The notes below the pieces were generated by a model. That model worked only from the letters and a program-made list of their open reading frames with translations, searched no databases and was not told the DNA's origin. 64,000 bases of DNA, from positions 186,001 through 250,000 of the IMG/VR virus record IMGVR_UViG_3300023174_000033; one strand, written 5' to 3'. Made by a program: the position numbers and the translations under genes. Positions 35,298 through 53,437 of this stretch are shown here, piece after piece. The first letter of the stretch is position 1; each line of letters opens with the position of its first letter.

Positions 35298-36071
35298 TTA
35301 TGACTTCTGCCAGATTTTTTCTAAATTTAGATTGGTCTTAACATCTATAAGATTATTATTAAATTTGAGCTGATATCCAATCATTCCAATAAACGAATTA
35401 ATAATTGATTTGATTTTGTTTTTTTCATGATCGTCAATATCAAAATTAAAAATAGTAATAAGATTTTCAATCTCGGAGAATGTTAAAGTGTTTTTTACCC
35501 CTAGGAAAAAAAGGAAGTCATAGGAATAATTGGTGAAACTTTCCGAATCTTCTTTATTTGATTTTGAAAGCAAGAACTGTGATAAGCAGTTTTCCACACC
35601 AACCGATGGCATTGAAAATTTATAACCTTCAATTTCAAAAACCCTTTCTTCTTCATTATAAAGTTTTTTTAAATTTTCAAAATTGAAATAGTTAAAGTTA
35701 TTTGAGGAAAATTCAATAAAATCAATTTTACTCATTTCATCATTGAAAAACTCAATCTGTATTTGTCTATTTGTAGTAAATTTTACAATTTCTAAAAATA
35801 TAAAAATTATATCAACACTTTTTAAATCTTCAAAATTGTAAGAATTACTAAATATAGTATTCTTTTGTACTATATTTTTCACACACTCAACAATTTCCAT
35901 TAAATTATCAGAGTCATATTTCAACTCATATTCAATGATATCTTCATCTTTTGCTTTCTTAATCTTTATAAGAAAGTCTTTGGGATAGAAATATCCTTTC
36001 GTTGGTAAAGAATTTACTTCTAAACCTTTGGAACCATCAATAAGATTTCTGATTAGAGAAATTAAACTCAT
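35298..36071 (-). CDS. Baseplate hub assembly protein, T4 gp26-like (putative)
   Basis: LP(T/S)KG.FYP N-terminal motif and L...D...IFL.I segment. Promoter at 36078..36085. Confidence 0.5.
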   Translation of the reverse strand: MSLISLIRNLIDGSKGLEVNSLPTKGYFYPKDFLIKIKKAKDEDIIEYELKYDSDNLMEIVECVKNIVQKNTIFSNSYNFEDLKSVDIIFIFLEIVKFTTNRQIQIEFFNDEMSKIDFIEFSSNNFNYFNFENLKKLYNEEERVFEIEGYKFSMPSVGVENCLSQFLLSKSNKEDSESFTNYSYDFLFFLGVKNTLTFSEIENLITIFNFDIDDHEKNKIKSIINSFIGMIGYQLKFNNNLIDVKTNLNLEKIWQKS

Positions 36072-36134
36072 TCAAAATATATATTTTTTAAAAATATAAT
36101 ATTTTATATCAAATAATTAATAAATGTTTAAATG

Positions 36135-36196
36135 TGGGAGTAGATGGACTCGAACCACCGGTATCAATTCTGCAATAGCCACTATGCGATACTCCC
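36135..36196 (-). ncRNA. tRNA-like RNA lacking the anticodon arm (62 nt)
   Basis: Perfect 7-bp acceptor stem GGGAGUA/UACUCCC plus A73, D arm GCAUAGUGGCUAUUGC, canonical T arm GGUGG-UUCGAGU-CCAUC, but only 12 nt (AGAAUUGAUACC) between the D and T arms. Confidence 0.75.
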
Positions 36197-36202
36197 AGTT
36201 TT

Positions 36203-36412
36203 CCCCACAATGAGATTACTTGTGAGTAGTTAATTCGGTTTTCTTTCTTTCAATAAACCTGTGGGGCATCCCCCGTGAAATTAGTCAAACTACTTGGAGC
36301 CTCTGTTACCTAGCTTTATCCCAACGAGACTGGCGTTTAAGGATGTCCAGTCCAATACCCTACCCATTGTTTAAGTCTTGGATTAAAGACTCTGAGTATC
36401 TCTTACTCATTG
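36203..36412 (-). ncRNA. Structured ~210-nt RNA with predicted pseudoknots in the tRNA array
   Basis: GC-enriched, no ORF, at least seven complementary pairs, two of them crossing (see findings). Confidence 0.55.
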
Positions 36413-36483
36413 TTATCCGACAAGGATTCGAACCTCAACTAACTCCGTCAAAGGGAGGTGTGCTACCGCTACACTATCGGACA
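36413..36483 (-). tRNA. tRNA-Gln(UUG)
   Basis: Cloverleaf: acceptor UGUCCGA/UCGGAUA, D arm GUGU-AGCGGUA-GCAC, anticodon loop CU-UUG-AC, T arm UGAGG-UUCGAAU-CCUUG. CCA is not encoded. Confidence 0.92.
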
Positions 36484-36489
36484 ATTTAG

Positions 36490-36558
36490 TGGAGCGTCAT
36501 CTTTCGATTATCCACTTCTGTTACGTTACCCGAAGATAAGAGGCTTTACAGAGCTCCA
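36490..36558 (-). ncRNA. Small (69 nt) structured RNA between two tRNAs
   Basis: Terminal helix UGGAGC/GCUCCA, internal UCUGU/ACAGA, a cUUCGg hairpin and a GAAA-tetraloop hairpin. Confidence 0.5.
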
Positions 36559-36562
36559 TTTG

Positions 36563-36634
36563 TAGTCCCACGGGTAGTCGAAACCCGATTGCCAGGATGA
36601 AAACCTGGATTCCTAACCATTAGAAGATGGGACC
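36563..36634 (-). tRNA. tRNA-Glu(UUC)
   Basis: Acceptor GGUCCCA/UGGGACU, anticodon arm CCAGG-UU-UUC-AU-CCUGG, T arm CGGGU-UUCGACU-ACCCG. CCA is not encoded. Confidence 0.93.
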
Positions 36635-36638
36635 ATGT

Positions 36639-36676
36639 GTAACTTTTTTTATGTCAGTGGGTAAGTTACCAACCCA
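36639..36676 (-). ncRNA. H-type pseudoknot 4 nt upstream of tRNA-Glu (the RNA may extend to ~36750)
   Basis: S1 UGGGU/ACCCA, S2 GUAACUU/AAGUUAC, L1 2 nt, L2 0 nt, A-rich L3 12 nt. Confidence 0.45.
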
Positions 36677-36753
36677 TCCTACTTACGATTAGGCTCCCAA
36701 CTTGAGATTTCTCACAGAGGTTAGAGGAACTACGATCCTGCCGCGGACAGACT

Positions 36754-36948
36754 CTACGGTCTTTCTTGTTCTGTGTAATGGTCCAATTGGTCCTCATTAA
36801 AAATATGAAGAAGACCATAATCATCCATTTCAGCAACTACTCTCACATTACCACCAACAGTTTTAAAAACTGAAACTATTGTACAAGGAAATTTATATCC
36901 TTTTGGTTTGTGAGCTTTATCTCCCACTTGAAATTTTGTTTCATTCAT
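36754..36948 (-). CDS. Small hypothetical protein (KOW/SH3-like)
   Basis: 64 aa with KFQVGD..K..GYKF motif, heading the tRNA array. Confidence 0.6.
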   Translation of the reverse strand: MNETKFQVGDKAHKPKGYKFPCTIVSVFKTVGGNVRVVAEMDDYGLLHIFNEDQLDHYTEQERP

Positions 36949-53081: not shown

Positions 53082-53086
53082 ATTTG

Positions 53087-53437
53087 TGGAGATGCGGGGC
53101 TCCGACTCCCCGGTCTTCCTCGACTAGACCTAAAATATCCTTCACAGACTTAGTCAAGTTTTTCTAAACTGACAAAATATTCAATTTGATTTTACGATTC
53201 TAACTGACAGATAACATCGTGAGTTTTACAGACTCAATACTGTTGAAAACAATTAAGCTACAGAAGCTACCTCGTTTGTCTTGAGGATGTTGTTTTGTAG
53301 GGCAAATACTAATTCTTCTTTGCTAGCTACTTCGTTTGTGTTGCCATTTACAGCTTTGATACCTTATTTAATTGGTCGATATCACCCAATGCCTGCTATT
53401 TTAACCCTACGACGCGAATCAATTCCATTTCATCCCC
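53087..53437 (-). ncRNA. ssrA: Transfer-messenger RNA (351 nt)
   Basis: 5' GGGGAUGAAAUGGAAUUGA; 3' GAC-CGGGG-loop-CCCCG-CAUCUCC-A. Acceptor stem has the G3:U70 alanine identity pair and A73. Internal tag ORF 53345..53253. Promoter at 53450..53457 and a terminator directly downstream. Confidence 0.9.
53253..53345 (-). other. tmRNA tag reading frame (A)GNTNEVASKEELVFALQNNILKTNEVASVA*
   Basis: Resume codon GGC after GUAAAU, inferred by analogy with Bacteroidota tags that begin with Gly. 30 codons to UAA. Confidence 0.7.

What the first reader, a model, noticed from the sequence alone, without database searches (positions are those of the whole stretch)
36135..36196. A tRNA with intact acceptor, D and T arms but no anticodon arm
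Seen: GGGAGUA-UC-GCAUAGUGGCUAUUGC-AGAAUUGAUACC-GGUGGUUCGAGUCCAUC-UACUCCC-A. The elbow elements (D-loop GG, UUCGA T-loop, U8) and a perfect acceptor stem are kept, while the anticodon and variable arms are replaced by a 12-nt linker. It ends like the real tRNAs of the array. Inference: either a very recent clean deletion, or a functional mimic that cannot decode and cannot be cut by anticodon nucleases. A mimic could be a decoy for tRNA-targeting toxins or uncharged-tRNA sensors, or an aminoacyl carrier for non-ribosomal use.
Basis: partly seen in the sequence, partly recalled or inferred. Interest (0 to 1): 0.7.

Follow-up and report, generated by a model that had tools for sequence, protein, structure and literature searches.

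The report
Truncated tyrosine tRNA in a megaphage
A 62-base remnant of a tyrosine tRNA gene in a 465-kb freshwater phage lost its anticodon and variable arms through a recent 22-base deletion, so it cannot decode; it lies where related phages nearly always keep some tRNA-shaped element, probably as an RNA-processing cut mark.

Summary
On the minus strand, 36196..36135 is a 62-nt tRNA-shaped element with a 7-bp acceptor stem, a D arm, a T arm and discriminator A. A 12-nt linker stands where the anticodon arm should be (Rfam tRNA model 39 bits, cut-off 29).

It derives from a class-II tRNA-Tyr(GUA). Its first 26 and last 25 nt are identical to full-length tRNA-Tyr genes of related phage contigs and of freshwater Bacteroidota, the likely hosts. 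One close relative (L037) has the same upstream 216-nt RNA with 9 differences, followed by an 84-nt tRNA-Tyr in the same place. A contig from another run shows the same arrangement. The short form was found only in the source sample.

Context tempers that verdict. The element directly follows a conserved, covarying 216-nt structured RNA. In 19 of 20 related loci that RNA is followed within 1-5 nt by a tRNA-shaped frame of 46-152 nt, and only three or four of these look decodable.

I therefore read the element as dead for decoding but probably still serving as an RNase P / 3'-end processing mark. That last step is inferred, not shown.

The parts
36135..36196 (-). 62-nt truncated tRNA-Tyr-derived element. 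Acceptor 5' strand 36196-36190; U8-C9 36189-36188; D arm 36187-36172; 12-nt linker 36171-36160; T arm 36159-36143; acceptor 3' strand 36142-36136; discriminator A 36135. No encoded CCA.
   Evidence: Rfam tRNA 39 bits, anticodon arm deleted; alignment to five full-length tRNA-Tyr genes, with one 22-nt gap.
36197..36412 (-). 216-nt conserved structured RNA of unknown family, abutting tRNA-Gln on its 5' side and the truncated tRNA on its 3' side.
   Evidence: No Rfam match. Found in 16 IMG/VR contigs by a 21-mer and in more loci by nhmmer. Consensus structure has compensatory changes in 11 of 51 pairs and in 14 of 31 pairs with 18 sequences. Part of it lies on a metatranscriptome contig of a relative (X15 record 1).
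36413..36483 (-). tRNA-Gln(UUG), canonical.
   Evidence: 56.1 bits.
36484..36562 (-). 79-nt spacer between tRNA-Glu and tRNA-Gln, relatively G+C-rich. Role unknown.
   Evidence: fold not better than shuffles.
36563..36634 (-). tRNA-Glu(UUC), canonical.
   Evidence: 51.9 bits.
36635..36780 (-). 146-nt leader upstream of tRNA-Glu. Its 5' end overlaps the end of a 64-aa ORF (36754-36948). A related sequence lies on a metatranscriptome contig.
   Evidence: (X15 record 5 covers 36558-36755).
36072..36134 (-). 63-nt A+T-rich spacer between the truncated tRNA and the next gene. No terminator-like site.
35298..36071 (-). Downstream 257-aa ORF of unknown function, followed by a DNA methylase. Its homologues were used to find syntenic relatives.

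Best explanation
The element is a tRNA-Tyr(GUA) gene of host (Bacteroidota) type. In this phage lineage it recently lost 22 nt, comprising the whole anticodon stem-loop and the 5' part of the long variable arm. It cannot read a codon. It also lacks two of the elements that bacterial TyrRS uses, the anticodon and the long variable arm, so it is probably charged poorly or not at all (textbook knowledge, not tested here). Acceptor stem, D arm, T arm and elbow are untouched. If the array is transcribed as one precursor, RNase P should still cut at G1, which also makes the 3' end of the upstream 216-nt RNA. The 3' end should still be trimmed after the discriminator, which frees the downstream mRNA. 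The phage's own CCA-adding enzyme could then add CCA. So it is a dead decoder that most likely survives as a processing mark, comparable to a plant-mitochondrial t-element or to mascRNA behind MALAT1. Shown: its structure, its descent from tRNA-Tyr, the deletion, its rarity, and the conserved 'tRNA-shaped slot' in relatives. Inferred: transcription, RNase P and 3' processing, CCA addition, lack of charging.
For: Origin. The exact 25-nt 3' half occurs in four IMG/VR contigs, always inside a full tRNA-Tyr(GUA). The 5' 26 nt are identical in L002 and L037. Nineteen Bacteroidota genomes carry the same D and T arms in an 82-nt tRNA-Tyr, nine of them with the identical acceptor stem.
Recency. L037 has the same upstream 216-nt RNA (9 differences of 216) followed by an 84-nt tRNA-Tyr. 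The X4 contig (4 substitutions and 2 indels over 243 nt) runs from the same 26 nt into an anticodon arm with a CUGUAAA loop and a long variable arm. The short-form 31-mers occur only in run X1, the probable source. No short copy was found elsewhere.
Real sequence. A Logan contig built by a different assembler (L097) carries the identical short form.
Slot. In 19 of 20 distinct loci holding the 216-nt RNA, a frame with a 6-7-bp acceptor stem and a T arm starts 1-5 nt after that RNA. Lengths run from 46 to 152 nt. Only three are clearly decodable: L025 Leu, L031 Gly and L037 Tyr. A fourth, L028, is called tRNA-Leu(AAG) by ARAGORN, but its anticodon stem does not pair. Syntenic relatives L098, L100 and L102 have a conserved 46-nt mini tRNA-like there, with neither D arm nor anticodon arm. 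In 18 of the 20 loci a tRNA 3' end abuts the 5' end of the 216-nt RNA.
Other points. The phage encodes a CCA-adding-enzyme homologue. There is no terminator between the array and the next gene. Precedent for non-canonical tRNA-like elements directing RNase P and RNase Z cuts: PMC1920247.
Against: There is no RNA evidence for this element. No metatranscriptome run holds its 31-mers, and no Logan contig of the runs laid covers 36104-36170. The frame is 100% identical to full-length copies, so there has been no time for selection or decay to show; conservation of the frame here says nothing. One locus of the 20 (L029) has only a 5' half behind the 216-nt RNA, so a complete frame is not strictly required. 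The frames were searched for by requiring pairing, which favours finding them, although the start point was fixed independently by the nhmmer hit. The array may simply tolerate debris from frequent recombination.
Confidence: 0.6

Rival explanations
1. A plain pseudogene: a neutral, recent deletion in a dispensable phage tRNA-Tyr gene, with no remaining role. The tRNA-shaped elements behind the 216-nt RNA in relatives are likewise debris from recombination in tRNA arrays.
For: Singleton status. Full-length copies in close relatives. Cores of related frames contain fragments of other T arms and direct repeats, which looks like illegitimate recombination. L029 keeps only half a frame. Homing endonucleases are known to break and rearrange phage tRNA arrays (PMC13096335).
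Against: 19 of 20 loci keep an intact acceptor stem and T arm exactly at the 3' end of the 216-nt RNA, although the cores differ completely. The 46-nt mini element is conserved across three relatives whose neighbouring protein is only 73-84% identical to the window's. Acceptor stems of non-decodable frames change in a compensated way, for example AGTCAGG/CCTGACT, AGTCAAG/CTTGACT and AGGGTGG/TCATCCT.
Confidence: 0.25
2. A selected trans-acting mimic: an uncleavable copy of the host tRNA-Tyr frame that soaks up a tRNA-Tyr-directed defence nuclease (Septu or retron PtuAB cutting the variable loop, OLD-type anticodon-stem amputation, or anticodon nucleases), or another tRNA-binding factor.
For: The frame is identical to the host-type tRNA-Tyr. 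[quoted passage not shown] Phage copies of this tRNA-Tyr each carry a different, compensated anticodon stem and variable arm, while the hosts keep GCAGA/TCTGT. This suggests pressure on that region.
Against: The form is unique to one sample. The identity of the frame is explained by descent. In the tested T5-family case, changing the anticodon or the stems of the phage tRNA-Tyr abolished rescue, so decoding was needed (PMC11555353). There is no expression evidence.
Confidence: 0.08
3. An assembly or sequencing artefact, or a minority variant promoted to the consensus.
For: I could not lay reads or contigs of the source run on the locus (laid nothing for X1). The neighbouring A+T-rich repeat breaks contigs.
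Against: Two assemblies hold the identical junction: the JGI contig and Logan contig L097 of 15 kb. All 3 sampled 31-mers of the 62-nt stretch, each of which spans part of the linker, are in X1. A clean 22-nt internal loss is not a typical short-read error.
Confidence: 0.04
4. An attP-like core for integration into the host tRNA-Tyr gene.
For: Long exact identity with host tRNA-Tyr.
Against: Both the 5' and the 3' parts of the tRNA are present, where an att core has only the 3' part. It sits inside a tRNA array. No integrase was detected among the neighbours. The record is a 465-kb phage genome with no prophage signature.
Confidence: 0.02

Closest known systems
Truncated tRNA genes (tRNA pseudogenes) in phage and bacterial tRNA arrays
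   Same: Clear descent from a functional tRNA gene, loss of an essential arm, and an intact orthologue in relatives.
   Different: The loss is a single clean internal deletion that leaves a perfect acceptor/D/T frame, and the element sits where a tRNA shape seems to be required for another reason.
t-elements of plant mitochondria (PMC1920247)
   Same: Non-canonical tRNA-like structures with the GGTTCRANYCC T-arm motif, whose ends coincide with the ends of neighbouring transcripts. They are thought to direct RNase P and RNase Z cuts.
   Different: Those are organellar and flank mRNAs. Here a phage element directly follows a 216-nt non-coding RNA. Cleavage is not shown here.
mascRNA behind MALAT1 (from my own knowledge, not checked in the library)
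   Same: A roughly 61-nt tRNA-like RNA whose RNase P cleavage makes the 3' end of the upstream non-coding RNA and which receives CCA.
   Different: That is a eukaryotic nuclear system. mascRNA keeps a small anticodon-like stem and is conserved, whereas this element is a singleton.
YrlA-type bacterial and phage Y RNAs (PMC4201824)
   Same: tRNA mimics with D arm, T arm and acceptor-like stem and no decoding loop. M. smegmatis YrlA is cut by RNase P and receives CCA.
   Different: YrlA is permuted: the acceptor-like stem is closed by a loop, and the Ro60-binding stem carrying the RNA ends stands at the anticodon position. YrlA lies next to a Ro60/TROVE gene, and this genome has no TROVE gene. 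There was no Rfam match other than tRNA.
Phage anti-defence tRNA-Tyr (T5 against retron-Eco7; T6 against Septu): PMC11555353, PMC13096335
   Same: A phage-borne tRNA-Tyr of host type, with a variable region that differs from the host's.
   Different: Those tRNAs decode, and they rescue by restoring translation. This one has neither an anticodon nor a variable loop.
tRNA-like domain of tmRNA
   Same: An acceptor stem plus T arm without an anticodon arm.
   Different: tmRNA has a large mRNA-like insert and pairs its own 5' and 3' ends. The phage has a separate tmRNA at 53084-53437.

Membership tests
Elongator tRNA-Tyr (bacterial class II) | 7-bp acceptor stem, discriminator A73, G1-C72 | tested here: met
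Elongator tRNA-Tyr (bacterial class II) | D arm with G18-G19 and T arm with the UUCRA loop | tested here: met
   Identical to host tRNA-Tyr.
Elongator tRNA-Tyr (bacterial class II) | Anticodon arm: 5-bp stem and 7-nt loop with GUA | tested here: not met
   Rfam alignment deletes model positions 27-43. ARAGORN makes no call. 22-nt gap.
Elongator tRNA-Tyr (bacterial class II) | Long variable arm | tested here: not met
   Only about 10 nt remain between position 26 and the T stem.
tRNA pseudogene / truncated tRNA gene | Sequence descent from a functional tRNA gene | tested here: met
   51 of 62 nt are identical to full tRNA-Tyr genes.
tRNA pseudogene / truncated tRNA gene | Intact orthologue at the same position in close relatives, and truncated form not conserved | tested here: met
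   L037 and X4 are full length. The short form occurs only in the source sample.
tRNA pseudogene / truncated tRNA gene | No function left | not testable with these tools
   Context argues for a remaining cis role, but there are no RNA data.
t-element-like processing signal | tRNA-like fold with acceptor stem and T arm, not decodable | tested here: met
t-element-like processing signal | Its ends coincide with the ends of neighbouring RNAs, and the position is conserved | tested here: inconclusive
   It abuts the conserved 216-nt RNA. 19 of 20 related loci have a frame 1-5 nt behind that RNA. The true RNA ends are unknown.
t-element-like processing signal | Cleavage by RNase P and a 3' endonuclease | not testable with these tools
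   Needs end mapping or an in-vitro assay.
YrlA / Y RNA | Ro60 (TROVE) gene in the genome, usually adjacent | tested here: not met
   PF05731 is absent from the 464,605-bp genome. It is present only next to the tRNA-Tyr of relative L037.
YrlA / Y RNA | Permuted topology with the Ro-binding stem at the anticodon position | tested here: not met
   Normal tRNA topology and a 12-nt unpaired linker. Definition taken from PMC4201824.
Phage anti-defence tRNA | Decodes the codons of the targeted host tRNA | tested here: not met
   No anticodon. The requirement is shown in PMC11555353.

The most novel reading that the evidence does not exclude
The armless tRNA-Tyr is not debris. It would be a newly arisen member of a selected class of non-decoding tRNA mimics in freshwater Bacteroidota phages. 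It copies the host tRNA-Tyr frame exactly while lacking the anticodon stem-loop and variable loop that defence nucleases cut. In this reading it acts in trans as an uncleavable decoy or sponge for a tRNA-Tyr-directed nuclease or another tRNA-binding factor, in addition to any role as a processing mark.
Probability: 0.08. Interest if true: 0.8.

Novelty: new member of a known kind. Interest (0 to 1): 0.35.

Why it matters
Taken alone, the element is a freshly truncated tRNA gene and is ordinary. What matters is what it led to. In a group of freshwater phages that probably infect Flavobacteriales, tRNA arrays are full of tRNA-shaped elements that cannot decode. These include 46-nt minis, 61-63-nt armless frames, and frames with hypervariable cores. 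They flank a conserved 216-nt structured RNA and small ORFs. If these act as RNase P / 3'-end processing marks, phages would be using the tRNA-punctuation logic known from organelles. Automated tRNA counts in large phages would then miss a whole class of tRNA-derived elements. The window's element would show how such an element can arise in one step from a working tRNA.

Tried and rejected
(1) Read-level check of the junction. The second read-laying run laid nothing for the source run X1. In the first call no contig of X2, X4 or X6 covered 36104-36170. So allele frequencies are unknown.
(2) Searches for other short copies all found none besides the source: a Tyr-frame pattern with a short gap in IMG/VR, the window-specific downstream junction in IMG/VR, the end of the 216-nt RNA plus the Tyr 5' half in JGI metagenomes (source plus full-length L037 only), and the frame with a 6-36-nt gap in 185,579 genomes (all full length).
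(3) The X4 anticodon-arm variant is not in IMG/VR.
(4) Y-RNA idea. There is no TROVE gene in the genome or in 20 related records, the topology is wrong, and Rfam finds nothing but tRNA.
(5) Thermodynamic significance. Folds of the element, the two spacers and the 216-nt RNA are no better than shuffles, so the case rests on the covariance model and on covariation.
(6) Neighbouring proteins gave no useful family. In particular, no homing endonuclease, integrase, TyrRS or RtcB was found.
(7) Promoter and terminator scan: nothing above chance.
(8) blastn against 50,697 cultured-phage records found only the tRNA-Glu.
(9) I tried to derive the linker AAUUGAUACC from the L037 variable arm. Only 5-7 of 10 positions agree, so the exact deletion end points cannot be fixed. 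The motif UGAU(U)AC also occurs before the T stem in the 46-nt mini elements and in an L022 frame. That may be chance or may point to recombination, and it is not resolved.
(10) attP reading: rejected (see rivals).

Full report
OBSERVATION. The window is bases 186001-250000 of a 464,605-bp virus record of 32% G+C, judged 98% complete. The feature lies on the minus strand, 36196 to 36135. It does so by deleting the 17 positions of the anticodon arm. ARAGORN does not call the element. It is the last member of a minus-strand array. The order is a 146-nt leader, tRNA-Glu(UUC), a 79-nt spacer, tRNA-Gln(UUG), a 216-nt RNA, this element, and a 63-nt A+T-rich spacer before a 257-aa ORF. None of the three tRNA-shaped genes encodes CCA.

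WHAT IT DERIVES FROM. The last 25 nt occur exactly in four IMG/VR contigs, each time as the 3' part of a full tRNA-Tyr(GUA) with a long variable arm (ARAGORN calls). The first 26 nt are identical in L002 and L037. The same D and T arms occur in an 82-nt tRNA-Tyr of 19 bacterial genomes, nearly all freshwater Bacteroidota (Schleiferiaceae, Cryomorphaceae, other Flavobacteriales, Chitinophagales). Nine of them have the identical acceptor stem. The element is therefore a host-type class-II tRNA-Tyr that lacks its anticodon stem-loop and most of its variable arm. MAFFT places one 22-nt gap. The genome has no other tRNA-Tyr and no TyrRS.

HOW OLD AND HOW COMMON.
- A JGI contig (L037) carries the same 216-nt RNA with 9 differences of 216, two of them a compensated double change in one helix. 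Directly behind it is an 84-nt tRNA-Tyr(GUA) whose 26-nt 5' part and 25-nt 3' part equal the window's.
- A contig of an independent run (X4) matches 36171-36413 with 4 substitutions and 2 indels. Below 36171 it continues into a 5-bp anticodon stem, a CUGUAAA loop and a long variable arm.
- Every 31-mer of the 62-nt stretch overlaps the linker. The three sampled ones are held only by run X1, the probable source, out of a set in which 20 runs hold parts of the surrounding kilobase.
- Pattern scans of IMG/VR, JGI metagenomes and one genome per prokaryote species found no second short copy.
- The junction is not an assembler product, because a 15-kb Logan contig (L097) has it letter for letter. 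That run may be the same sample, so this is not independent biological support.
- I could not obtain read-level allele frequencies.
Conclusion: this is a real, recent, lineage-specific deletion.

THE SURROUNDINGS CHANGE THE READING. The 216-nt RNA in front of the element has no Rfam match and no blastn match in cultured phages. A 21-mer from it hits 16 IMG/VR contigs, and a profile finds more. Its consensus structure has compensated changes in 11 of 51 pairs across 13 sequences and in 14 of 31 pairs across 18 sequences. One clade has a 53-nt insertion in a hairpin loop. It is a structured RNA family.

In 18 of 20 distinct loci a tRNA 3' end (T arm, acceptor strand, discriminator) abuts its first base. 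In 19 of 20 a frame with a 6-7-bp acceptor stem and a T arm begins 1-5 nt after its last base. Only three of those downstream frames are clearly decodable: tRNA-Leu in L025, tRNA-Gly in L031 and tRNA-Tyr in L037. A fourth, in L028, is called tRNA-Leu(AAG) by ARAGORN, but its anticodon stem does not pair. The others are 46 to 152 nt long and have no usable anticodon arm.

I also found relatives through the downstream 257-aa protein (84% and 73% identity). They share gene order with the window. In this slot they carry a conserved 46-nt mini element with an acceptor stem and a weak T arm but neither a D arm nor an anticodon arm. L037 has the same flanks as these relatives but carries the full tRNA-Tyr. 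So the occupant of the slot is exchanged, while its tRNA shape is nearly always kept.

A WIDER CLASS (seen in passing). Many of these frames share one Leu-like scaffold: 5' AGTCAGG-TG-GCGGAAT..GACGC, and 3' ACAGG-TTCGAAT-CCTGT-CCTGACT-A. One pattern for short versions hit 39 IMG/VR contigs. The cores between the D arm and the T arm range widely:
- 11-13 nt in L052, L054 and L072. These are 61-63-nt elements with the same architecture as the window's.
- Mini-hairpins capped by tetraloops, with structure-preserving changes, in L039, L058, L067, L068 and L070.
- Inserts of 36-100 nt.
L052 and L054 hold homologous armless copies in unrelated flanks. Several frames bracket small ORFs with only 4-23 nt to spare. 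The window's genome has none of these Leu-type frames, so its armless Tyr arose independently.

MECHANISM.
- Shown: the anatomy, the descent, the deletion and the conserved slot.
- From established knowledge: RNase P and CCA-adding enzymes act on the acceptor/T-arm half of tRNA. Bacterial TyrRS relies on the discriminator and first pair plus the anticodon and the long variable arm. Non-canonical tRNA-like t-elements direct RNase P and RNase Z cuts that make mRNA ends in plant mitochondria (PMC1920247).
- Inferred: the array is transcribed through, since there is no terminator before the next gene. RNase P cuts at 36196, which also finishes the 216-nt RNA. The 3' end is trimmed at 36135, and the phage's own CCA-adding-enzyme homologue adds CCA. 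The product does not decode and is probably hardly charged.
I put 0.9 on the origin and non-decoding part. I put about 0.5-0.6 on a retained processing role, and 0.6 on the statement as a whole.

RIVALS.
- Pure debris (0.25). This fits the singleton status and the scrambled cores. It does not explain why the frame is kept at exactly this place in 19 of 20 loci.
- Trans-acting decoy (0.08). The missing parts are the ones cut by Septu or retron PtuAB (variable loop of tRNA-Tyr, PMC13096335) and by OLD (anticodon stem, PMC12445682). Phage copies of this tRNA-Tyr each have a different compensated anticodon stem and variable arm, while the hosts keep one. However, the tested phage tRNA-Tyr needed its anticodon to rescue (PMC11555353), and this form is not conserved.
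- Artefact (0.04).
- attP core (0.02).

COMPARISON AND NOVELTY. As an object it is a truncated tRNA gene, which is a known kind. As a working part it most resembles t-elements and the mascRNA arrangement. It is not a YrlA Y RNA: there is no TROVE gene, the topology is normal rather than permuted (PMC4201824), and Rfam gives no such hit. It is not a tmRNA domain either, since a separate tmRNA lies at 53084-53437. I found no paper in the library describing tRNA-shaped processing marks in phages. That is an absence in a limited library, not proof of novelty.

LIMITS.
- There are no RNA data for the element.
- The exact deletion end points cannot be fixed, because the variable arm differs between all relatives.
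- The frame search required pairing.
- Logan contigs show presence only.
- Host assignment rests on tRNA identity alone.

Noticed in passing
window 36197-36412 (-); also L020-L035, L037, L046, L057, L069, L098, L100, L102: A conserved 216-nt structured RNA with no Rfam match, always inside phage tRNA arrays and bounded by tRNA-shaped elements. Compensatory changes occur in 14 of 31 consensus pairs across 18 sequences. One clade has a 53-nt insertion in a hairpin loop. Part of it lies on a metatranscriptome contig of a relative. It is a candidate new phage ncRNA family.
   Followed up: partly
L022 13814-14555; L052 11981-12041; L054 6456-7253; L072 8538-9285; L039 1673-1742; 39 loci L038-L076: A widespread family of non-decoding tRNA-shaped elements with a constant Leu-like frame (AGTCAGG...CCTGACTA) and a hypervariable core of 11 to about 100 nt. 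Often several occur per contig, bracketing small ORFs or the 216-nt RNA within a few bases. ARAGORN does not call them. Rfam tRNA scores are 30-43 bits with the core left unaligned.
   Followed up: partly
L098 485-530; L100 1054-1099; L102 1053-1098: A conserved 46-nt mini tRNA-like element (GGTTAGG acceptor stem and a weak T arm, with no D arm and no anticodon arm) in the slot behind the 216-nt RNA in syntenic relatives of the window phage.
   Followed up: partly
L001 5233-5314, L002 7039-7120, L003 19-98, L037 1305-1388, against host loci L077-L095: Phage copies of this tRNA-Tyr keep the host acceptor, D and T arms exactly or nearly so, but each has a different, compensated anticodon stem and variable arm. 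Eighteen of the 19 host genes share the stem GCAGA/TCTGT, which contains paired CNG motifs of the kind that P2-OLD cuts. This is consistent with nuclease-evasion pressure on that region.
   Followed up: partly
L037 1-1032 (-): A Ro60/TROVE-family gene lies 270 nt downstream of the full tRNA-Tyr in relative L037. It is split by one in-frame TAG into 200-aa and 141-aa ORFs, both of which hit PF05731. No TROVE gene was found in the window's genome or in 20 related records.
   Followed up: partly
window 53084-53437 (-): A phage-encoded tmRNA (Rfam RF00023, 58 bits). ARAGORN did not report it.
   Followed up: no
genome C1 59585-59953 (-), outside the window: A 390-aa ORF with a PolyA_pol / CCA-adding-enzyme domain (PF01743, E=8e-33). 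This fits the fact that the phage tRNA genes lack encoded CCA.
   Followed up: no
genome C1 95929-96708 (-), outside the window: With introns allowed, ARAGORN proposes a tRNA-Leu(UAA) carrying a 695-nt intron. This may be a group I intron in the anticodon loop or a false call.
   Followed up: no
window 36484-36562 and 36635-36780 (-): The two other spacers of the array are G+C-richer than the genome. A relative's version of the 146-nt leader lies on a metatranscriptome contig together with tRNA-Glu (X15 record 5). Their folds are no better than shuffles, and their role is unknown.
   Followed up: no
genome C1 1-60 and 464546-464605: Both ends of the record lie in similar G+C-rich repeats (GGxCCxTGG.., collagen-like periodicity). 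The contig probably breaks inside a repetitive gene rather than at true genome ends.
   Followed up: no
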